This document shows, one piece after another, positions 3,080 through 60,789 of a DNA stretch of 64,000 bases. Made by a program: the position numbers and the translations under genes. The DNA lies in assembly GCF_006345805.1 (NCBI RefSeq), contig NC_043015.1:52452001-52516000 (forward strand), written 5' to 3'. The notes under the pieces are model-generated. The model searched no databases, was not told the DNA's origin, and worked only from the letters and a program-made list of their open reading frames with translations. Each line of letters starts with the position of its first letter. Position 1 is the first letter of the stretch. Origin of the DNA: Octopus sinensis. Lineage: Eukaryota.

Positions 3080-3289
3080 AGGGCAGCTTAGGAGAGGTGG
3101 GATGAGTCGATTACATCAACCCCAGTGCATAACTGGTACTTATTTGATTGACCCTGAAAGGATGACAGGCAAAGTCGACCTCGGTGGGATTTGAACTCAG
3201 AACATAGCGATAAACAAAATACCACTAAGCATTTCACTAAGTGTGCTAACGATTCTGCTAGCTCGCCATCTTAAAGAATCATAGTAATG

Positions 3290-10177: not shown

Positions 10178-11250
10178 ATACATGGCACTGTGTATACTTC
10201 TATTGAATGCTTACAAGTTAATGGAGGTGTTCTACCACATTATGGAATGAAAATATCGGAGATCCCTGTTGTTCAAGGTTGAAGATACAGTTGTTTGATC
10301 CACTGAATGACCCGCTCCTAAATTAAGTGGTTGAGTATTCTTCAGACGTGTCCCCTTAATGTAATTCTCAGGCACAATCAGTGTGACTCAGTGAGTTACA
10401 AGGCTATACAACCCACTTGACAGGATTCCTACAGTTTCTATCTCTGCAATTTCATTCACAATGTATATAGTTTGGTGTGAGTCAACAGAAAGTGGCATTT
10501 GCCCAAGATGTTATGAAGAGAATTCAAACCTAGGCCCTTGTGCCTGTAGAGCAAGAATCATAACCGTGCAGCCATATGCACATATAAGAATAAAAATAGA
10601 AAACCCTACTCAAAGATTCTTTTCACACACGCTCACATAGATTGAGGAAATAATTATAATCTTGGCTGTTGCTTCATTAGCACATCATACAGGATCCTCA
10701 TTAGCACAGCATTCCAGAATCAAAAGGAGATCTGTAAAATTTTGACTAATATTGCTGGGAGCACTATGTCACTCCAAGATAAGATCCAGAAGGCTTAATA
10801 TAAGCCCCGCAGAGTGAATAATAAAAGCAAAAATTCAAATTAGGAAAGGAGAAGTCAAACTGACATTACAAGTGTTTCCTTAAACAGACGACATCATTTA
10901 TTCCATATCTCATACAGTGTTATGTAGTTCATACAATGTTGTGTAACATGTACCAAAATATATGAAAATATGTAATAGTAATCCTATAGTCAGTCCATTT
11001 CCTCAGCTGTTGTAATTTTATTTTATTGGTCAATTGTGCCTTGAAATCATGACATCTGAGGAAGCGAATGGACAATAGGATTATTATTACATATTTCCAT
11101 ATATCATGGCATGTGTGTTTTAGTCTTCACAGCAACTGGCTATTGCCATACATGAATACTATCTTCAAAAAGTAACAATTTCATCATATATATATATATG
11201 TGTGCGTGTGTGTGTGTGTATGTGTGAGTGTATATATATATATATATATA

Positions 11251-11284
<34 letters not shown>

Positions 11285-11304
11285 CATGTATGATATTGTA
11301 GATA

Positions 11305-11361
<57 letters not shown>

Positions 11362-11878
11362 ACATATACATATATATAATGTATATATAATCATATATAT
11401 ATATATACATATAATACATATATATATATATAATACATATATATAATACATATATATATATACATACATATATAATACATATATATATACATATATAATA
11501 CATGTAAAAATACAAATATAATACATATATATATAATACATATATATATTATATACATATAATATATATATGTATTATGTATTGTATATATGTATTATGT
11601 ATTGTATATATGTATTATATATGTATATAATACATATACACATATATATATTATTTATATATTTATTATATATATAATATATTATGTTATATATATATAT
11701 ATATTATACATGTATATGTGATTACATTGATGAGCTTTTATATATTAGCCACATCACTCCCTTTTCTTTTAATTCTGTTTTAACTAGTTTTAAAACTGAG
11801 CAGTTAAGGGATGACGATGATGAGGAAGGGAAACGAAGAGCAATTAAGTCAACATCATTAATATCATTACATATGTGA
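7132..11878 (+). CDS. Candidate four-exon chain of an unidentified protein (7132-7162, 8394-8440, 11133-11170, 11788-11878)
   Basis: Plausible AG/GT sites and consistent phases give [68 protein letters not shown]. No family recognised; may be chance. Confidence 0.33.
8542..8733. mobile_element. Foldback/MITE with about 57-bp imperfect TIRs
   Basis: 8542-8598 is roughly 80% identical to the reverse complement of 8678-8733. A solo arm occurs at about 1501-1575. Confidence 0.6.
9150..9830 (-). mobile_element. RTE-type LINE fossil
   Basis: [21 protein letters not shown] resembles LPLL.TKGLSLRVKGRLYDACV. Heavily decayed. Confidence 0.45.
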
Positions 11879-26501: not shown

Positions 26502-29071
26502 CATATATATGTATATATATATATTTATATATATGTATATATATATATGTATATACATATATATATATATACATATATATATATACACACACACATACAT
26601 ATATATATACACACATATGATATATAAAGTAATATATATTGGATATAGCATTATATAATGCAATACATATTATCTAATATACCATACAACTTATATATAT
26701 ACATACATATACATATATATATATTATAACATACAACTAACTTATATATAAATTATACATACATTATTATATAACTTATATATAAATTATACATACATAT
26801 TATATATATTATATATATATAAATACATACATTATATATATATGGATGGATGGATGGATGGGTGTGTGTTTTATATTTGATATACTCCATACCCAACAAC
26901 TTAAAAAAAAATACCTTTTTTTTTTTAACCTTTGTATTTTTTACTTTCCCCAATGTAATCCAATGTTAGCTTTCACCAAATCAGGCTGACTTGTCAAAAG
27001 AAAAAAAATAGGAGGGGAGGGCAAGGGGAATCAGTTAAATCTAAAGAGCCAATTAATTTGTTTTTAATTTCAAATTAGTTTCGTCAGGTTTTTTCTTATT
27101 TTTTCTTTCTTTTTTTTTTTTTTCTTTTTACAACACAACAACTCTTAATACCATAGAAGTCTCATTTTTCGGACAGATAGAAAAATCTGTGAGGGACAAT
27201 ACCTGGATCTTTTTTTTTTCCATTTCTCATTATAGGTACTTTTCTAAAAAAAAAAAAAGGGATTTTTATGGGATGGTGAGGGGTTGGGAGTTGAAAGGAA
27301 GATAAACGTTAAGAAAAACAATCTTTTAACAAATAGACTACCTGACTTCAAATAAGAAGAAATTGTTAATATTTTTTTTAATTTAAAAAAAAATTTTTTT
27401 TTCCATATTTTTTGTGTGAGTGGCACGTCAATGATTGGATCTCGCAATAGGAAAATTAATATTAATATTAATATTAATAATAATAATAACCATAACAATT
27501 ATAATGACAAAAGAAACTACAGAAATCAACTAGATGAAATAAACTAGACAAATGTGTCCGTATAATATACATGTGTGTGTGTATACACACACAAACATGT
27601 ATATATACATGTATATGTATATAAATTACTAACAACAGCTACAACTGAAGTAAAGTAAATGAACAAACATTAAAAATAAACAATTGAAAGAAAATAAGAT
27701 GGACCTTAACCTTACTGTAATTCCCAATGTAATTTTACACATGAATATACAAGGAAAAATACACATTTACATGCTAGCACAAAACATACATGTATATTGT
27801 GTTTTTTTATGCGAGAATGTGCATATAAAGATATATACACACACATATAAATATATACATGAACTGATGTCATCGACCCTGATGATCAATTGATATACAT
27901 ATATATATATATATACACACATATATATGACAGCACATGTAGTAGTCAAATTAAATGCTTCACTAGAATTTATGCATTACATAATTTTAAGTGCAACAGA
28001 AATGAATGTTGATGACCAACTTGCAAAGTAGTTTCTTTAATCAATCACGACCAAAATTAATTTACTATGCCTGGTCTTCTACTAATTCAAGAATGGACCA
28101 ATGAGAGAGCATCTACATGATTGCTTGACTGACAGAAATTGCAGCCAAATCTCCCTCAAATCAAACCCTGCCATCTTCAACAAGGACACATTAGATGCAG
28201 TCTTAGATGCCTCTAGATTGATAGGATGGTCATAGCTGGAATGTCCTTGAACATAGTATTTACTTAATCAAGGTTGATTTGGGGTGATTTAAGACTAACA
28301 GAATAAAGAACTACTCCCTCAAAGAAAAAAAAAATGAAAAGAAGAAATGGTCAAAGAGGTGTTGGAATATCTCTAATCCCTCTGAACCCTTTTAACACCA
28401 TGATAAATGGAATATAAACCAAAAATCTCCAACAGGAACTTATAAACCTACTCTGAGAAATGCTGAACAAATCTGAAGACTTAAAAAAAACTTTCTCTCA
28501 TTTTAGACAAAAAATATAAATAAACAAACGAAGGATGATACCTTATTAATATTTAAACTAAGAGGGTTTCCTCTAGAGAAAATAGTTAAAAATAATTTGA
28601 GCACTTAAATCCAACCCTTAAATCCCTAAAAAATTATGCAAATTAATAACAAGATGAAGGCTGGTTAAACAAGTTTGGGTTGTTGTGTATTGTGATTTTT
28701 TTGTTGTTTTGTTGTCACTTTTCTTTTTAAAGTATATATTTAGATTGATGAAAACTACATTTTAAGGGCTTAAAATAAGCAGTTGCACAAAGCTGACATT
28801 ATTTGGAAAAAAGGGGATTGAGACATAAAAAAAAAGTCATTTCACAATGCAGGCAGAAAAAAAGCAAGAAGAGGTTAAAAAAGACAAAAAAAAAAATGAT
28901 TAAAAAAATAAAACACAGGTTGAAGTTCCTGGGGCTTGCTTGTTTTATAGGAAGGAGCTGCTGCTGATGCTGCTGGAAAAGGGTTGCTTTTTTTTTTTTG
29001 GTGTGGCCAGTTGAGTTTGAATGCCCAACACACAAGCGAAGCAAATGTTATGCAGGCTTTTTGCTAAGATG

Positions 29072-34439: not shown

Positions 34440-35479
34440 TATATATATACACATATATATATATATTCTACTGTCTACGATAACTACTACAGTTTGGATG
34501 TTGAGTAAAAATATCACAAATGCTATCATATGGTGAAGTTATTATCTAATACAAGATTAACACCACAGACGATGCCATCATGTTTTTTTTTTATAATGGC
34601 TCGTTTAAAATTTTATTAATATCATATTTTTTTGTTTGTTTTCAAATTTTTTTTTCAAAGATTTTAGGTTAAATTTTATAATTATTTGAAATTTTTTTTT
34701 TTTTGAAATTATTTTTTTCCTTTCACTTTTTGAAATTGGAAGGTTTGTCCTTTGTCAAATTCAAAAAAATATTAAATATCATCATTGTCTGAAATTTCCA
34801 ATAGTTTCCAACCATGATTTTGAATTCCCCCATAATTTCTAAAATGAAAAAAAAAAGACAAAAAATAGTCTTAAAAATTATTTAGAAAAAAAAAACACTT
34901 TTTTTTCAAAAAATCAAATACACTTTTCAATTTCTTTTATGCATAATTATACATTCATATAAATATGTATGTTTATGTGTGTGTGTTTATGAATGCATGT
35001 GTGTTTATATATACATATATATACATATACGTACATACAGCAACATGCATGCAAACACATTAACCATACATGCATATATATATACAAATACATTTGTATA
35101 TGTTGTATGCACACATGCATATGTATATATGCATGCAGGCACATACACACACATAGATGCATACAAACATTTAAATTTACATTTATGTACACACAAAAAG
35201 TACATGTGCATTTATATATACACAAACACACACATGTATGTACAAGATTATATATATATATATATATATAAATACATACACACATATACATATATACATA
35301 CACACATATATAAAATATACATATGTATGTATTAGGAAGATGAAGTATAGAAAGAAGGGAAAATGCTTCTTACACACCTTTGACCTATTAAAGGTTTATG
35401 CAGTTTTAAAAAAATGAAACAACAAAAAAATATACTGCCCCCCCACCCACCAAAACAAACTATAATAAGAATAATAATT

Positions 35480-36600: not shown

Positions 36601-37387
36601 TAATAATAATAATAATAATAATGATAATTGTTTGTTTTTTTTTTAAAAAAGGTAGGTGTGTAATTTTCAGAATTGATTATTACTGAAATAAAAGTACATA
36701 GAGGAAAAGAAGATGTGGAGGCGTTCATGTGTCTTTTTTGTAAGTAAGTTGAGTAAATACCCTCCCAACCACCCAAGGGTGGGCATTAGCAATGAACAAT
36801 GGAGAGGGAAGTGATTCTTTTCTTCTCAATCAGCCAAGTGTTGAAACAAGGAGGGAGAACAAAGCTGGATACCTTGATGGCCAATATGAGAAACCCTTAG
36901 CGAGTGTGAGGCATGCAAAGGGATGCCCTTGTTAGCCAACACCCCTATCATTTCACTAGCCCTTCACACAGACATATACCATTTGCTATGATCCTTATGA
37001 TGATATTGTCGATGATGATGATGATGATAATTATATTTATTACCTCTCAATAGAGCTACAAATTTAAGGTGACATGGTGGTGGAGGCTAGTTGAATAAGA
37101 ATCTGTGGCATTAATGCCTTCATCATGATTACTATAGGATTAATTTGGTTCAAAAACGTATTCATGAGGATAATAATAATGATGATGATGATGTTTGCAA
37201 CATATATGGCATATGGCCAACTATTTTAAAATGGGGAGCAGGAGCAGAGTCCAGCCCCAGTATATGACAGCTACTTATTATAACAGTTTCTAGAAGGATG
37301 ACCAGCTAAGTCAGACCCAGCTGGAAGAAACTCACTGCTGCAATAATGGTTTTCTAACACACACACACACATATAAATATATGAGAG

Positions 37388-43159: not shown

Positions 43160-43911
43160 TCACACACACATACACACATATTTTGTTCAGTTTTTTTTTT
43201 CTTTCTTTTTTACTTCATCTTCTTTTTTCATCATCTTCTATCAGTTCCTTTAAATGATTGGCCGGATAAAAAGATATCATTATCATCATCATTAATACGA
43301 ATTGTTGCCGTTGTTGTTCTTGTAGTAGTAGTAGTAGTAGTAGTAATAGTAGTTGCTGTAGTAGCAGTAGTAGTAGTAGTAGTAGGCTATGTTGTAGTAC
43401 TCATCCCACCCGCCCCACCCTGTCAGTCATGTAAGACTATTATTAGTACTACTATTACTACTACTACTACTACTACTAACTTCTATTACTGCTACTACTG
43501 CAACTATTAGTACTGCTACATTGATTGAGCCTATTTCTTTTTTTCTTTTTTTTTTTCTTAATCCCCATTTCACATAGACAGACATGTAGATAGATAAATT
43601 GATAGATACTTAGATAGATAGACAGATAGAAAGATAGAGAATGAGAAAGTAAGAGAGTCTAGAATGATCAGTGTAGGCTCCCCACTAAAAATTATAATAA
43701 TAATAGTAATAATAATAATAATAATAATCTTGTAGTGATGCAATAAAACAAAGACGACAATAACAACAACACTGTCCACCGAAGTAATAACAGTAAGAGT
43801 AGTAGTAGTAGTAGTTGTAGTTGTAATAGTGGTTGTAGATGTAGTTGTAATAGAAGTAGTAGAAAGTTGCTGTAGTAGTAGTAGTAGTAGGTCGGCTGCT
43901 GCTGCTGCTTC
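43044..43911 (-). other. mbl: Probable proximal 3' UTR of mbl
   Basis: Follows the stop codon. The first canonical AATAAA on the minus strand that I could find is at 43049-43044. The true 3' end is unknown and could be much further. Confidence 0.45.
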
Positions 43912-44048
43912 TCAAGTGGTCAAGTTGGGAGCAGCAAGGGCTGATAATATAACAGGGATGTGATAGTATTTGCACAGGTGTCTTCGGCACTTCCCCTTAA
44001 CTGAATCACGGCACACAGTCACCTTGCCCTCCGTCACTTCAACATAAT
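43912..44048 (-). CDS. mbl: Muscleblind terminal coding exon: (D)YVEVTEGKVTVCRDSVKGKCRRHLCKYYHIPVILSALAAPNLTT*
   Basis: Long U-rich tract ending ccactttcAG (AG at 44050-44049), phase-matched to the upstream exon. Contains VTVCRD..KG.C.R..CKY.H, typical of MBNL even-numbered fingers. TGA at 43914-43912. Confidence 0.93.
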
Positions 44049-47375: not shown

Positions 47376-47460
47376 CCTCCATTAGATGCACAAACTTACA
47401 TTGTGGCCTGTTACACTGGCTAGACTTAAAATCGCGGCACAGTGGGAGGGTGTCCAGCAA
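47376..47460 (-). CDS. mbl: Muscleblind coding exon (85 nt, phase 0 to 1), CCCH finger LLDTLPLCRDFKSSQCNRPQCKFVHLME
   Basis: Acceptor tctcttccAG and donor GAGG|GTAAGT. C-x7-C-x4-C-x3-H finger preceded by the MBNL-type D.L.VCR.F motif. The final G joins AT of the next exon to give Asp. Confidence 0.93.
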
Positions 47461-55738: not shown

Positions 55739-57859
55739 CCATTCTTAATAATGATAATTGCTTCTAGTATCCTAATAATAACCACCACCATATTTAGAGG
55801 TTCACATCCCCAGTAATTTTTCTTAACACTATGTATTTGAATACTTATAGTACTTACAACTATATTCCATGTATAAATTTAGTAAACATTTAACTAAATA
55901 ATAATAACGTTATTAGGTTTACACCTCAAAATTGGCAAGTTACAGACTGACAATGGGATTTACACTTTGGTTTACTCTTTGGGAACATTTCTCCTGAACA
56001 AAACTTCCATCACAAGAAAAAATCAAGACCAACAATTTGCATTTCATTCCATACAGTTGTGGCAAGAAATATGAAGGTGGGGTCAGCTGCCCATGAAAAA
56101 GAAGGCAACAGAAACATTATAAAGCTGAAAATCCATGAGAAGATTAAGAAAATAAGGCATAGCTCAACCTTTGAGGAAGGAAAAACAAAGTCAGCAACTC
56201 ATGTCAAGACAACAGAGAACAATACTGAAAGATAAAAGAATTTGTACATAAATTGAAAGAATTGGTATGTAAGTTTGTGATAACTTCCTCAGTAGATCCA
56301 GCAGAAAGATGAACACTAGATAAGAGCCTGTATTTAACAAAGAACATAAAGCCTAAGATCATAAACAAATAAGTTTAAAGCTCCTAAATTAATTGACCTA
56401 TGGTACAATAGCACAGTGAATATAAGAGTTGATTAAACACCAAGTAATAAGGGCATTAATTTACTTAGTGGCTATAAGTTCAATCCCTAGATCAGTGGAT
56501 CTGTACATATTCTGGTTGTAGTGTAGTGAACTAGAGGCAACACAAATTTAAGTAAAACTAATATAAAAATATCTCTAACACTGACAATGGAAGGAGATCA
56601 GTTTACCACAGTTGTTTGAATTAAAGATTTGACTTGAAACTCCATGTACGTTACCAAATATGACAGACATTTGAAGAAGGTTGGAGGATACAACTGCTGA
56701 AATGTTGCGATTTACAACCAAAAGAGGAACAACAATCTTGATATATCAGTATACTCATAGTTTCTCTCAGTGACTGACCTGTTGGAAACCTGTAACCAAC
56801 AATGCTCTCACTCACTAATTACAGTATGGCTTTTTTAAAAATGAAATGGAAAACAAAAATCCGCTTACAAGGAGTGGAACTCAGCACCATAAGCTAACAA
56901 AACATTTTGTCAATGTAACAGTGCATTTGATGCTTAGAGTAGAAACTTGTTCGACACTGCAATACTTATTTAGAGGTAGTGGGGAAGTTAAAACTTAATT
57001 GCAGGTAGACTGCAGATCCAGCACGGTACACGAGAGCTTCTTGCTTGGTGTGTCTGCTACTGGATCAACATGGTTATTTATAAGGTGATGGTCACCAGGT
57101 CAGTTATACATTTTGATTACCCAAAGACCCACTTCCAGAATATAATAATCCTTATCACCAGTAGAGTGAACAAGGAAAAAAACCCAGAAAAATGAGCTGA
57201 AATATGGAACTGTTTCATAAAGCAGAGAGACAAACTCCATTTAACACATTCATACACACAAACTGATATCACATGCAAAAAGACAGCCACTACCACACGG
57301 ACCAAAATAAACATTGGTACTTAAAACCAAATTACAAACATGCAAGAATATATAACAGATAGGTGTTTGACATATATAAGAGACAAGCGCACTCAATACT
57401 GGGTGGGAAAGTTTAATATATACCTGAGTATAGCATAATACAATCAACTAATGTGGCTTTGAGCCATTTCGTGAAATTATGTCGTAATTACTTAATGATA
57501 CTTGTCAGGTGTTATAAACATCCCAACAGAGTTTGTACAAGATGAATTAACAAAGAGAACAAAAGTGATTGTATTATATATTAGCCAAAAGAGGAACTTA
57601 AACAAAAAAAAAAAAAAAAAGCAAGAAAAACGAAAGGGATTCAAACTAGAGATAAATGATGTTTATTTTCATTTTGTGAAACTGACGAGTTTGAGGACTG
57701 GCAAAATTGAGACAAAACTGCTAATTATATGACTAGATTCTATTGCAAAACAGGAGCTCCAAGTGACAGAAAAAAAAAAACAGAACAAAACAAAAACGAC
57801 AAAACAAGACAGAACATCTAAACTGCATCAAACTTAAGTTGAAGCAAATTCAAATAATA

Positions 57860-58175
57860 TATATATACATGTGTATATATATACATGTATATATACATGT
57901 GTATATATATATGTATATATATACATACATGTATATATACATGTGTATATACATGTATATATATGTATATATATATACATGTATATATGTGTATATACAT
58001 GTATATATGTGTATATATATGTATATATACATGTGTATATATATATGTATATATACATGTGTATATATATATGTATATATACATGTGTATATATATATGT
58101 ATATATACATGTGTATATATACATGTATATATACATGTGTATATACATGTGTATATATACATGTATATATATGTA

Positions 58176-58225
<50 letters not shown>

Positions 58226-58250
58226 CACACACACATACATACATACATAC
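57860..58250. repeat. Minisatellite built from ATATACATGT(GT) units
   Basis: Direct tandem repetition of 10-16-nt variants; source of the 130-160 aa Y/I/C ORFs in the track. Confidence 0.9.
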
Positions 58251-58489
58251 ATACACAAATGTGAGAAATTTCTGAATACATAATGCAGAATGTATAACAA
58301 TTAAAAAACTGAGATTTTTAGACCATTGTTAGTTTTGTGTTTTGCAATGCAGCTTTATGCCACAACTAAATATTATTGAGAAAAAAACTTTAGTTGAGAA
58401 AAAAAAAAGTGGTAAGGCAAAAGCTAAAATAACAACGGTTTAAAATTTCAGCTTTTCATTGTTTATGTATGCATGTATATATGTATGAA

Positions 58490-58522
<33 letters not shown>

Positions 58523-58907
58523 GTATATAGGTATGCATGTGTGTAAGTGTATGTATGTGTATATACATATATATATATGCACGCATAAGTGAACTCATAA
58601 CTATGTATGTTGATATGTATATGGTTAAAAGAAGTTCGATATATGACAAAAGAAAAAAATGTGATACAGATATCTTCTTGGCCATGTATAAAAAATAAAA
58701 GACAAATCATATTTGTCTTAAGATTAAGAAAAGTTCAAGACACGAATGAAACAAAACCAAAAGATACTTAAACAGTAAGATAAGCAGAAATGAAGAAAGC
58801 AAACACGCAATACAATAATAATAATAAAACACTAGTAAAACAAAGAGCAGTAGTAGAAGCAGGTGTAGCACTAAGGATGATGAAGAAGAGTTTTAGAGCA
58901 CTACTAC

Positions 58908-59020
58908 CTGGTTGTTCTCATCAAAGTAATTTACACTAGCAGCATTAGTAGGAAGTGAGGTGGTGCTAGTAGCAGCACTTGCCATCGATGCAGGCTGGTT
59001 AGTGTTGGCAATCATCGGCA
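58908..59020 (-). CDS. mbl: Muscleblind internal coding exon (113 nt, phase 1 to 0): xPMIANTNQPASMASAATSTTSLPTNAASVNYFDENNQ
   Basis: Acceptor ccacccacAG (AG at 59022-59021) and donor CAG|GTAGTA (GT at 58907-58906). The frame is open and ends in phase 0, matching the next exon. YFDENNQ|LLDTLPLC matches the YMDSNGQ|LLETLPVC-type motif I recall from long insect Mbl isoforms. VPM..SAATS.TS.P..NQ resembles the human MBNL1 segment [32 protein letters not shown] (recalled, not searched). Confidence 0.82.
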
Positions 59021-59022
59021 CT

Positions 59023-59343
59023 GTGGGTGGTTGTCATTTGGAAAGTTTTTTTTTTTTTTCAGAAGACAAGAAGGGTCAACAACAGAGGTGGTGGTGGTGT
59101 GGTGGTGTTGGCGGCAGCAGCGGTAGCAGCAGCAGCAGCAGTAGTAGTAGATGACAGCAGCAGGAGCAGCAGTGGTAGCAGCAGCAGCCGATAGCAGCAG
59201 CGGCAGCAGGAGTGGTTATAAAAGTGCAGACGAAGCACAGGTGACATGCAGAGTAGTGGTACAAGTGCACAGGAGAGGGTCAAGGTATGAAAGAGAGGAA
59301 TAGCAAAAAAAAAAAGTAAAAAAAAAGAAAAGAAATAGTAGAC
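59023..59343 (-). promoter_or_regulatory. AG-exclusion zone with YGCY cluster upstream of the mbl 113-nt exon (candidate Muscleblind response element / distant branch point)
   Basis: No CT dinucleotide on the plus strand (no AG on minus) from 59023 to 59343. About 23 YGCY motifs, 21 of them within about 59110-59210. U/C-rich tract at 59340-59270. Confidence 0.55.
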
Positions 59344-60789
59344 CTTATTTTCCTTTTTTTTCTGTGATTTATTTACTATTGTTATTATTATTGTTATTAT
59401 TGATTTTTTTTTTCGCCAAAACATTAAAGGAAGCGAAAATCCTGGTCTTGGATTCTTCAAGCTTGTCCTGTGCCTGCCATAGGGTAAGGACCAAGAAAAA
59501 GCATGCAAGAACACTTCTTACAAGTTTCTAGCTCCAAAATCATTTGAGAGTTTCTTTTTGATTACAGCAAAATCTTAGCTGTTCTTCACAGGTTTGACCA
59601 ATGGGAAATGGTGCAAATTATCAATAAAAAGGGCAATTATTATTATAATTATTATCATTATCATCGATATCAAGAAGTGTAATTGAAGAGCTAGTGAGAG
59701 AAGTGCAAAAAAAATCTCTTGGAAAGGACAAGAGTTAGAGATGAAAGGCATGAGAAGTATAGAATAGAATAATATGGAAGTCTTAGAGTCATGAAAATGA
59801 AAGAATTCCAAGTTGTAAGATGGTGCTTAGTGTGAACAGAGTGCATATGCATGTGTTAGTGCCCAGCCTCAAGTCAACCTTAATTAAAAGAAACAAAGAA
59901 AACCCAAGATCAAAAGATTCAACCCTGATTAACAAGCCCTTTATTCCAATACACTGTATTTAGGATTGCATAATTTAATGTCTCATGCCATTTTTAAAGC
60001 CTGACAAGAGTAATCAGAGTGAAGTCTGGTTGTTATTTGTTGCAGGTTGTTTGACCACACACAAAAGACATGGGCAATGCTTTGATGACAAGAGGGCTGC
60101 ATGGGATATGGCTCATCATTAGACAGGCCACACTACTAGTAATTTTTCATTAGGCATTAGGCTATTCAGAAAAGTCCATAGGCTACAGCTTACGCATGAC
60201 TGATATAGAAATTCCCTTGTTTACTCTATGTGATTGCTGCTTTTATTGTAAAATGGTAGCAATTGGTTTTAGTCAAGCACTGAGGGCTGAAACCAAATGA
60301 TGGTTAAGGAACAAGCCGCAAGTCAAACACATCAAGTATGGACTGATAATAACAGCTGACTAGAACACACAAAGTATATTCTGTATCTAAGGGTGTTAGG
60401 ATTTTGAGAATGTAATATGCATATCTGCTTGGCTGCCTGTCATTTCTAGACAGAATTTGGAATGTAATTTGTAAACCAAGAGGCTTAAAGTTTATGCTAG
60501 TGTAACAGAATGGCAGAGATTCAAAAAGTTAAACTATTCAAAGAGTAAGTTTTGATGGGATTAAAAAGAATAAAAGAGAAATTTCTGGTGAACTAATAGT
60601 CTTTCAAGAGAGAACTGCCTTAGGATTAATACAAAAGAAATGTCTTAAGGTTAATAATTTATTCTCATTTGAAGTCTTTAACCATTTGGTGCGATCTCGC
60701 TACAGACTACTATTGGTTTTATAATATAAAGTTTCCACTTTTAAAATGGCTGAGTAGTTAGAGTCTTGACTAGAATGCTTGTCCTAGGT

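What the first reader, a model, noticed from the sequence alone, without database searches (positions are those of the whole stretch)
59023..59343. 321-nt AG-exclusion zone loaded with Muscleblind-binding motifs in muscleblind's own intron
Seen: on the transcribed (minus) strand there is no AG for 321 nt upstream of the acceptor of the 113-nt exon. The zone holds a distal U/C tract (59340-59270), then about 23 YGCY motifs (21 in about 100 nt), while the acceptor itself has a poor pyrimidine tract (CAACCACCCACAG). Candidate branch points: TTGAC at 59076 (55 nt out), TTGAC near 59280 and TTTAC near 59317. Established: MBNL proteins bind YGCY clusters, and binding upstream of an exon usually represses it. 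Human MBNL1 autoregulates exon 5 through a YGCY element lying between a distant branch point and the AG inside an AG-exclusion zone. Inference: the cephalopod gene uses the same design on a different exon, a candidate negative-feedback switch I am not aware has been described in molluscs.
Basis: partly seen in the sequence, partly recalled or inferred. Interest (0 to 1): 0.82.

Follow-up and report, generated by a model that had tools for sequence, protein, structure and literature searches.

The report
Long AG-free acceptor of octopus muscleblind exon
The 321-base AG-free stretch is the oversized acceptor region of an old, usually skipped muscleblind exon; mammals have the same layout at the matching MBNL1 exon, and octopus has added a long CUG repeat, the sequence Muscleblind binds best.

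Summary
In detail: 59343-59023 (minus strand) has no AG, holds 23 YGCY motifs (21 within 100 nt) and ends at a pyrimidine-poor acceptor.

- **Gene and exon.** The window is the 3' part of octopus muscleblind. The 113-nt exon is a conserved coding exon that sets the reading frame. If included, the downstream C-terminal zinc-finger pair is in frame. If skipped, the protein ends FAGHPPTVPRF*. Skipping is the only form in cephalopod proteins and transcripts on record.
- **Long AG-free zone is conserved.** The orthologous exon has zones of 157-517 nt in Littorina, Pinctada and two unidentified invertebrates, and 222 nt in a mammal. Where other exons of the gene could be compared, it has the longest zone in all three loci.
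- **Human counterpart.** The exon matches the 95-nt human MBNL1 exon (VPMVHG...), not exon 5. Corvelo et al. 2010 reported its 224-nt AG-free zone and mapped its branch point at -229.
- **Conserved motif.** The only 6-mer shared by all seven introns is UGCAUG, the Rbfox site. YGCY enrichment is strong in Octopus and Littorina and weaker elsewhere. The CUG repeat itself is not seen outside Octopus.

Best reading: a distant branch point, with a repressor platform (Rbfox plus Muscleblind) before a weak acceptor. Feedback by Muscleblind is plausible but untested. It is a new member of a known kind.

The parts
59344..59345 (-). Last AG upstream of the zone; the 5' boundary of the AG-exclusion zone.
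59023..59343 (-). AG-exclusion zone, 321 nt, intronic.
   Evidence: An in-frame TGA at 59036-59034 stops the exon's frame from extending upstream. The zone contains no acceptor.
59288..59340 (-). Distal U/C-rich tract. It contains the yUnAy adenosine at 59317 (UUUAC, -297); further candidates lie at 59288 and 59280.
   Evidence: the next 30 nt after A59317 are 87% pyrimidine, the best in the zone. In the mammalian ortholog the mapped main branch point (-229) sits just upstream of the equivalent tract.
59241..59250 (-). UGCAUGUCAC: Rbfox-type site (UGCAUG) inside the zone, 230 nt upstream of the exon.
   Evidence: TGCATG is the only 6-mer present in the 300 nt upstream of the orthologous exon in all 7 species. 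The same 10-mer occurs in the mammalian MBNL1 intron at -146.
59110..59209 (-). Imperfect (CUG)n microsatellite with 21 YGCY motifs in 100 nt; candidate Muscleblind-binding platform.
   Evidence: It folds into CUG-type hairpins with periodic U.U mismatches; the fold of the whole zone has z = -3.0.
59085..59113 (-). CCA/CAC-rich tract (gccgccaacaccaccacaccaccaccacc).
   Evidence: A similar caccaccaccacc run follows the TTGAC motifs in the Littorina ortholog.
59061..59080 (-). Proximal branch-point candidate (GUUGAC, A at 59076, -56) with a short 15-nt pyrimidine tract.
59046..59059 (-). A14 run between the short pyrimidine tract and the acceptor.
59021..59045 (-). Pyrimidine-poor acceptor region (cuuuccaaAUGACAACcacccacAG). 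The AUGRCAAC motif is shared with three other invertebrate orthologs.
58908..59020 (-). 113-nt cassette exon (phase 1 to 0; length 2 mod 3) encoding (V)PMIANTNQPASMASAATSTTSLPTNAASVNYFDENNQ.
   Evidence: The peptide is conserved in Mbl isoforms of Pinctada and Patella and in the Littorina genomic locus (unannotated there), and is contiguous with the next exon. It is skipped in all cephalopod proteins on record.
58786..58907 (-). Donor (CAG|GUAGUA) and the first 122 nt of the downstream intron, with 6 YGCY motifs.
47376..47460 (-). First C-terminal zinc-finger exon, read in two frames: LLDTLPLCRDFKSSQCNRPQCKFVHLME when exon 113 is included, FAGHPPTVPRF* (stop at 47428-47426) when it is skipped.
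   Evidence: The C-terminus of O. vulgaris isoform X1 maps at 100% to 47458-47429.
43912..44048 (-). Second C-terminal zinc-finger exon: the coding part of the terminal exon, with stop TGA at 43914-43912.
   Evidence: In the zinc-finger frame pN/pS is 0.135, against 5.2 and 2.2 in the other frames.

Best explanation
The AG-free tract is the extended 3' splice-site region of an ancient cassette exon of muscleblind that sets the reading frame. The exon is 113 nt in octopus and is the counterpart of the 95-nt VPMVHG... exon of human MBNL1.

Proposed mechanism:
1. The branch point most likely lies far upstream, at or next to the U-rich tract 59340-59288.
2. The acceptor AG is therefore reached only across roughly 260-300 nt that must stay free of AG, and it is itself pyrimidine-poor.
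3. The spacer serves as a platform for splicing repressors. One is a UGCAUGU Rbfox site (59250-59244). The others are YGCY sites for Muscleblind, which in octopus have been amplified into an imperfect (CUG)~30 microsatellite (59209-59110) able to form CUG-type hairpins.
4. Occupancy of the spacer blocks use of the acceptor and the exon is skipped. The next exon is then read in the +1 frame and the protein ends FAGHPPTVPRF*.
5. When repressors are scarce the exon is included and the C-terminal tandem zinc finger is in frame.

Shown here: the anatomy, the gene and exon identity, skipping in cephalopods, purifying selection on the zinc-finger frame, and conservation of the long AG-free zone and of UGCAUG.

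Inferred: the branch-point position, who binds, the direction of the effect, and any feedback.
For: Gene and exon:
- The two zinc-finger exons match O. bimaculoides A0A0L8GUY8 at 100%.
- A cephalopod transcript, L001, joins canonical Mbl to these exons.
- The C-terminus of O. vulgaris isoform X1, AGHPPTVPRF, is encoded at 47458-47429.
- The exon-113 peptide ...NAASVNYFDENNQ|LLDTLP is contiguous in Mbl isoforms of Pinctada and Patella, and of fly-, spider- and tick-like sequences.

Skipping and frame logic:
- All 10 cephalopod proteins lack the exon. Those that reach the zinc-finger exon enter it in the +1 frame.
- The orthologous exons are 113, 107, 167 and 95 nt, all 2 mod 3.
- pN/pS is 0.135 in the zinc-finger frame, against 5.2 and 2.2 in the other frames. 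The included isoform must therefore exist.

Conserved architecture:
- The AG-free zone is 321 nt in Octopus, 243 in Littorina, 157 in Pinctada, 182 in L118, 517 in L014 and 222 in the mammal.
- It is the longest among all exons compared in each of the three multi-exon loci (ranks 1/3, 1/8, 1/8).

Motifs:
- TGCATG is the only 6-mer present in all 7 upstream-300 sequences. The empirical joint probability is 9e-6, and the family-wise probability for any 6-mer is about 0.013-0.016.
- YGCY enrichment against each locus's own background: Octopus 7e-15, Littorina 5e-7, L118 3e-3, mammal 4e-3.

Human precedent:
- The AG-free zone before the orthologous human exon is 224 nt, with the predominant branch point at -229 (PMC2991248).
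- MBNL1 binds within an AG-free zone downstream of a distant branch point to repress its own exon 5 (PMC4176163 citing Gates 2011).
- rbFOX1 represses an MBNL1 cassette exon (PMC5964235).

Structure: MFE -54 kcal/mol, z = -3.0, with CUG-type hairpins.
Against: - No octopus transcript containing exon 113 was found, so inclusion is inferred from selection and from orthologs.
- There is no binding, lariat or expression data.
- A proximal yUnAy (A59076, -56) followed by a 15-nt pyrimidine tract could be the working branch point. The CUG tract would then lie upstream of it.
- The CUG tract is an ordinary-looking microsatellite in a window full of them, and it is not present as such in any other species examined.
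- YGCY enrichment is marginal in Pinctada and L014 and absent from the proximal zone of L006. Pyrimidine-rich AG-free sequence inflates YGCY counts by itself.
- A simulated decay of a pure CUG tract stays AG-free in 3-33% of trials. AG avoidance inside the repeat is therefore not significant on its own.
- Four of the seven comparison loci are unidentified organisms from metagenome or Logan contigs.
Confidence: 0.55

Rival explanations
1. Constrained spacer, neutral repeat. The AG-free zone and the Rbfox site are functional, but the CUG tract is a neutral microsatellite that expanded in a spacer whose only constraint is 'no AG'. Muscleblind plays no regulatory role here.
For: - The window holds about 140 tandem-repeat rows, including many triplet arrays.
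- The CUG array is absent from the other six orthologous introns.
- Only UGCAUG is universally conserved.
- AG avoidance within the repeat is not significant.
Against: - YGCY is also strongly enriched in the non-repetitive Littorina zone (16 in 243 nt, P = 5e-7).
- It is moderately enriched in the mammal and in L118.
- L006 has a CUGCUGCC cluster further upstream.
- This is the only CUG-class array in 64 kb, and it sits in the sense orientation within 200 nt of the one regulated acceptor in Muscleblind's own gene.
Confidence: 0.3
2. Proximal branch point. Splicing uses A59076 (-56) with the short pyrimidine tract 59075-59061. The AG-free stretch further upstream is then a by-product of low-complexity sequence, and anything bound to the CUG tract acts from upstream of the branch point rather than between branch point and AG.
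For: - UUGAC at 59076 is a perfect yUnAy followed by 15 pyrimidine-rich bases.
- Another human MBNL1 exon with a 134-nt AG-free zone uses branch points at -51 and -64, and the orthologous human exon has minor branch points at -31 and -41.
Against: - Long AG-free zones recur at this exon in six of seven species, with very different sequence. That is hard to explain if only the last 56 nt matter.
- The predominant mapped branch point of the orthologous human exon is at -229, next to the long pyrimidine tract.
- The octopus distal tract is far stronger: 87% pyrimidine, against 47% over the 30 nt after A59076.
Confidence: 0.3
3. The tract is exonic or coding, for example a poly-Ala or poly-Leu stretch of Muscleblind, or a gene on the other strand.
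For: - A 151-aa open frame spans the zone on the minus strand, and 50-64 aa frames lie on the plus strand.
- Mbl proteins contain Ala-rich stretches.
Against: - No acceptor can exist inside an AG-free zone.
- The exon's own frame is closed by TGA at 59036-59034.
- No protein in the databases contains these frames.
- In orthologs the exon starts at the same UGCC.. position directly after the AG.
- No Rfam family comes near threshold.
Confidence: 0.02

Closest known systems
Human MBNL1 95-nt exon (VPMVHG...ATANQ; 'exon 9' in Corvelo et al. 2010, 'exon 8' in other numbering): 224-nt AG-exclusion zone, branch point mapped at -229
   Same: - Orthologous exon: it starts VPM, its length is 2 mod 3, and it lies in the same C-terminal region, downstream of the YQQAL..QLQQ exon.
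- Long AG-free zone (222 nt in the mammalian contig L124).
- Long pyrimidine tract at the distal end.
- UGCAUGUCAC inside the zone.
- YGCY enrichment.
- Suboptimal acceptor.

   Different: - Octopus carries a 100-nt CUG microsatellite with 21 YGCY motifs, against 8 dispersed YGCY in the mammal.
- In molluscs the exon puts a further tandem zinc finger in frame, whereas in mammals it leads to a short tail.
- Nothing has been mapped experimentally in octopus.
Human MBNL1 exon 5 (54 nt) autoregulation (Gates, Coonrod and Berglund 2011)
   Same: YGCY sites inside an AG-free zone downstream of a distant branch point and pyrimidine tract. MBNL1 represses an exon of its own gene.
   Different: It is a different, non-orthologous exon with a different protein consequence (a nuclear localisation signal). 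The octopus case lacks any binding or dosage data.
RBFOX repression of an MBNL1 cassette exon through upstream (U)GCAUG
   Same: A UGCAUG upstream of an alternative exon in the C-terminal part of an MBNL gene. rbFOX1 overexpression inhibits the 36-nt MBNL1 exon 7.
   Different: The published exon is the neighbouring 36-nt exon. Rbfox control of the 95-nt/113-nt exon is my inference from motif conservation.
Expanded CUG repeats of DMPK (myotonic dystrophy type 1) that sequester MBNL
   Same: CUG repeats that fold into hairpins with U.U mismatches, the classic high-affinity MBNL substrate.
   Different: The octopus tract has about 30 imperfect units, is intronic and lies in the mbl gene itself. 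It is not known to sequester anything.
Autoregulation of C. elegans mbl-1 exon 7
   Same: Invertebrate Muscleblind controlling splicing of its own transcript (mbl-1).
   Different: A different exon, and no AG-exclusion-zone design is described there.

Membership tests
Alternative exon with a long AG-exclusion zone and a distant branch point | AG-free stretch of about 100 nt or more directly upstream of the acceptor | tested here: met
   321 nt. It is the longest among the exons of the locus.
Alternative exon with a long AG-exclusion zone and a distant branch point | Branch point used far upstream (more than about 50 nt) with an adjacent downstream pyrimidine tract | not testable with these tools
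   Sequence only: yUnAy adenosines at -297, -268 and -260 next to an 87%-pyrimidine tract, and a rival at -56. The human ortholog maps at -229.
Alternative exon with a long AG-exclusion zone and a distant branch point | The exon is alternatively spliced | tested here: inconclusive
   Skipping is seen in every cephalopod protein and transcript on record. Inclusion is inferred from pN/pS of 0.135 in the downstream frame and from orthologous isoforms. No octopus read was seen.
Alternative exon with a long AG-exclusion zone and a distant branch point | The arrangement is conserved at the orthologous exon | tested here: met
   157-517 nt in five other species. L006 has a NAGNAG acceptor, then 103 nt and 416 nt AG-free separated by a single AG.
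MBNL/Mbl autoregulatory intronic element | Cluster of YGCY motifs close to a regulated exon of an MBNL/mbl gene | tested here: met
   23 YGCY motifs, 21 in 100 nt, Poisson P = 7e-15 against the window background. Gene identity.
MBNL/Mbl autoregulatory intronic element | YGCY enrichment conserved in orthologs | tested here: inconclusive
   Strong in Littorina, moderate in L118 and the mammal, marginal in Pinctada and L014, none in the proximal zone of L006. No cephalopod ortholog was available.
MBNL/Mbl autoregulatory intronic element | Direct Mbl binding, and exon inclusion that responds to Mbl dosage | not testable with these tools
   Needs CLIP or gel shift, and a minigene or knock-down.
Rbfox-regulated exon | (U)GCAUG within about 300 nt of the exon, conserved across species | tested here: met
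   TGCATG is present in all 7 species and TGCATGT in 6 of 7. Joint probability 9e-6; family-wise about 0.015.
Rbfox-regulated exon | Exon inclusion responds to Rbfox | not testable with these tools
   The only precedent is for the neighbouring exon of mammalian MBNL1.

The most novel reading that the evidence does not exclude
Cephalopods have co-opted a natural CUG-repeat tract, the same RNA that poisons MBNL in myotonic dystrophy. It sits inside muscleblind's own pre-mRNA and works as a dosage sensor. Free Mbl loads onto the intronic (CUG)~30 platform in the AG-free zone and shuts off the exon that adds a further zinc-finger pair. Repeat length would then tune the ratio between Mbl isoforms with and without the C-terminal zinc-finger pair. 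This was built on a branch-point / Rbfox-site / weak-acceptor module inherited from the bilaterian ancestor.
Probability: 0.3. Interest if true: 0.75.

Novelty: new member of a known kind. Interest (0 to 1): 0.55.

Why it matters
- **Deep conservation.** One specific splice-regulatory layout of MBNL genes appears shared between mammals and molluscs. It consists of a long AG-free zone, a distal pyrimidine tract, a UGCAUG and a weak acceptor before a frame-setting exon. That makes it a good system for asking how distant-branch-point regulation works and why it persists.
- **Annotation gap.** No cephalopod muscleblind model on record contains the 113-nt exon or reads the C-terminal zinc-finger pair in frame, yet that frame is under clear purifying selection.
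- **A natural CUG repeat.** The octopus tract offers a non-pathogenic CUG-repeat/Muscleblind pairing that can be tested directly for feedback control.

Tried and rejected
**Searches that gave nothing usable**
- Exact look-ups of the 42-aa exon ORF and the 151-aa ORF spanning the zone found nothing. A0A0L8GUY8 is also not on record.
- Cephalopod genomic orthologs were out of reach. The O. vulgaris gene spans 178 kb and the Argonauta gene 141 kb, so no DNA was returned.
- Isoform look-ups for Magallana and Patella failed because only the longest product of a gene is indexed.
- The protein-pattern scan of metagenome contigs was saturated by chance matches. The DNA-pattern scan was also mostly chance, but a BLAST screen pulled out several invertebrate mbl contigs, of which four (L006, L014, L043, L118) had an NYFD-type exon with upstream intron; L043 was left out of the comparison because its acceptor was unclear.
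- Tran et al. 2011, wanted for the human exon sequences, is not held. Exon limits were taken from vertebrate proteins and a mammalian contig instead.

**Explanations rejected**
- Coding or exonic tract: rejected on the grounds listed under the third rival.
- Known RNA family: nothing came near threshold.
- Transposon copy: the core of the zone has no second copy in the window.

**Tests that were inconclusive or set aside**
- Selection against AG inside the CUG tract: the simulation gave P = 0.03-0.33.
- The zone's length as evidence on its own: set aside, because three longer AG-free gaps exist on the same strand.

Full report
**1. The observation**

On the minus strand the last AG before the exon is at 59345-59344. 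The next is the acceptor at 59022-59021, so 59343-59023 (321 nt) is AG-free. The exon is 59020-58908 (113 nt) with donor CAG|GUAGUA.

The zone holds 23 YGCY motifs, 21 of them in 59209-59110. Tandem Repeats Finder calls that stretch an imperfect period-3 array with 73% matches. The acceptor-proximal 20 nt are 55% pyrimidine, against 85% and 95% for the other two exons in the window.

On chance:
- Three longer AG-free gaps exist on this strand, lying largely in AT-rich simple repeats. Length alone is not special here.
- Shuffled versions of the zone are AG-free in at most 0.1% of trials.
- The YGCY cluster is the densest in the window on either strand.

**2. Which gene, which exon**

Two CCCH zinc-finger exons lie downstream on the same strand, at 47460-47376 and 44048-43912. 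They match O. bimaculoides A0A0L8GUY8 at 100%.

A Logan transcript from another cephalopod (L001) joins a canonical Muscleblind N-terminus to these two exons. The C-terminus of O. vulgaris 'muscleblind 1 isoform X1' (AGHPPTVPRF) is encoded at 47458-47429. The window is therefore the 3' part of muscleblind.

The peptide of the 113-nt exon...SLPTNAASVNYFDENNQ, runs directly into LLDTLP.CRDF in annotated Mbl isoforms of Pinctada and Patella, and in fly-, spider- and tick-like sequences. The Littorina RefSeq model lacks the exon, but I found it in the Littorina genomic locus. It is a real, old coding exon.

**3. Splicing status and what the exon does**

Every cephalopod protein in the databases lacks the exon. 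These are O. vulgaris, two O. sinensis isoforms, Argonauta, and six Logan or JGI transcript ORFs. Those that continue into the zinc-finger exon do so in the +1 frame and stop there, ending FAGHPP[T/S]VPRF*.

The exon is 113 nt, which is 2 mod 3. Its orthologs are 107, 167 and 95 nt, all 2 mod 3. Inclusion is what puts the C-terminal tandem zinc finger in frame.

Between octopus and the L001 species, pN/pS is 0.135 in the zinc-finger frame, against 5.2 and 2.2 in the other two frames. The in-frame (included) isoform must therefore be made, although I found no octopus transcript that shows it. The stop codon of the skipped form lies 50 nt from the last junction, which is borderline for nonsense-mediated decay (my inference from the coordinates).

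**4. The long AG-free zone is conserved at this exon**

I obtained the orthologous intron from six other sources:
- Pinctada imbricata (L002).
- Littorina saxatilis (L003). The exon is unannotated there; I found it at 28181-28347.
- Three unidentified invertebrate contigs that a metagenome scan fetched by luck (L118, L006, L014).
- One mammalian MBNL1 contig (L124).

| Source | AG-free zone (nt) |
|---|---|
| Octopus (window) | 321 |
| Littorina | 243 |
| Pinctada | 157 |
| L118 | 182 |
| L014 | 517 |
| Mammal (L124) | 222 |
| L006 | NAGNAG acceptor, then 103 and 416 separated by one AG |

In each of the three loci with several exons, this exon has the longest zone: 321 against 32 and 111; 157 against 21-73; 243 against 27-101. 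It also has among the weakest proximal pyrimidine tracts. That argues against a chance by-product of a microsatellite.

**5. What is conserved inside the zone**

An unbiased k-mer count over the 300 nt upstream of the exon finds exactly one 6-mer present in all species: TGCATG, the Rbfox consensus UGCAUG. TGCATGT is present in 6 of 7.
- Random 300-nt windows of the same loci would all carry TGCATG with probability 9e-6.
- The family-wise chance that any 6-mer is shared by all seven is about 0.013-0.016.
- In octopus the site is UGCAUGUCAC at 59250-59241. The same 10-mer occurs in the mammal at -146. It is preceded in both by a second shared 10-mer, UCUCUUUCAU, at the end of the distal pyrimidine tract.

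YGCY enrichment against each locus's own background:

| Source | Poisson P |
|---|---|
| Octopus | 7e-15 |
| Littorina | 5e-7 |
| L118 | 3e-3 |
| Mammal | 4e-3 |
| Pinctada | about 0.04 |
| L014 | about 0.04 |
| L006, proximal zone | no enrichment (0 motifs) |

L006 does have a CUGCUGCC cluster further upstream. The CUG microsatellite as such is seen only in octopus.

**6. Relation to the human gene**

Vertebrate proteins and the mammalian contig show that the 36-nt MBNL1 exon encodes GSILCMTPATSV. The next exon, of 95 nt, encodes [32 protein letters not shown].

The octopus exon shares several features with this 95-nt exon: the VPM start, the SAAT[ST][ST]..S[VL]P core, the final Q, the phase, and its place in the C-terminal region downstream of the YQQAL..QLQQ exon.

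Corvelo et al. 2010 call it 'exon 9'; their cloning primer matches the end of this intron. They report a 224-nt AG-free zone, a suboptimal acceptor and a predominant branch point at -229 mapped in vitro, with minor ones at -31 and -41.

rbFOX1 is reported to repress the neighbouring 36-nt exon.

**7. Mechanism proposed**

- A distant branch point lies at or beside the U-rich tract 59340-59288. A59317 is followed by 87% pyrimidines.
- A spacer of about 260-300 nt must remain AG-free.
- Repressors load on that spacer: Rbfox at 59250, and Mbl on the CUG tract. The tract is predicted to form CUG-type hairpins (MFE -54 kcal/mol, z = -3.0).
- The acceptor is weak. The default outcome is skipping, and relief of repression yields the isoform with the extra zinc-finger pair.
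- Six more YGCY motifs lie in the first 122 nt of the downstream intron, so binding on both sides of the exon is possible.

**8. Limits and rivals**

- The proximal UUGAC at -56 could be the working branch point.
- The CUG tract could be a neutral expansion in a spacer constrained only against AG. A decay simulation keeps a CUG tract AG-free in 3-33% of trials.
- No cephalopod genomic ortholog, read data or binding data were available.
- Coding, known-RNA and transposon explanations were rejected.

**9. Verdict**

The AG-free zone is a conserved, functional-looking feature, and its human ortholog is already described. The octopus-specific novelty is the CUG-repeat load, whose role is untested. 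I class it as a new member of a known kind, of moderate interest.

Noticed in passing
window 59241-59250 (minus); L124 about 3090-3099: UGCAUGUCAC is identical in the octopus and mammalian introns upstream of the orthologous exon. A second shared 10-mer, UCUCUUUCAU, lies upstream of it in the same order in both.
   Followed up: partly
window 59030-59037 (minus); L002 about 37253-37260; L118 about 2113-2120; L006 about 1913-1920: An AUGRCAAC motif sits 8-20 nt upstream of the acceptor in octopus and three other invertebrates. In L118 and L014 the junction reads GGCAACAG|UGCCGAUGAU, and in octopus CCCACAG|UGCCGAUGAU. Its function is unknown.
   Followed up: partly
window 47376-47460 (minus): This exon is read in two frames. 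It encodes zinc finger LLDTLPLCRDF... when the 113-nt exon is included, and the 11-residue tail FAGHPPTVPRF* when it is skipped. That tail is the annotated C-terminus of O. vulgaris isoform X1.
   Followed up: yes
proteins P0161-P0166, P0173, P0185, P0194 (exons lie outside the window, beyond 64000): Cephalopod Mbl carries a tandem duplicated 14-residue unit, YSSTKLNEIQPYFT, twice (2 x 42 nt in L001) just upstream of the skipped exon. No counterpart was seen in the other mollusc proteins I read.
   Followed up: no
window 43800-43912 (minus) and L001 1150-1231: Triplet repeats (GCA)n and (CUA)n follow the stop codon of the terminal zinc-finger exon. They are also present in the other cephalopod's transcript, so 3' UTR repeats are shared between the two species.
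   Followed up: no
L003 28181-28347 and 26274-26324: The Littorina saxatilis RefSeq model ('LOW QUALITY PROTEIN') omits the conserved NYFD-type exon and uses another small exon instead. Cephalopod annotations likewise lack the isoform with the C-terminal zinc-finger pair.
   Followed up: partly
L006 1920-1930: The orthologous acceptor in this unidentified invertebrate is a tandem NAGNAG (acagcag). A single AG interrupts an otherwise AG-free stretch of about 520 nt.
   Followed up: partly
window 11164-11736, 57834-58273, 34935-35367: The three AG-free gaps longer than the finding lie largely in AT-rich simple repeats. One of them is only about 640 nt downstream of the 113-nt exon.
   Followed up: partly
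window 59046-59059 (minus): An uninterrupted A14 run separates the short proximal pyrimidine tract from the acceptor. This is unusual for a 3' splice-site region and has no counterpart in the other species.
   Followed up: no
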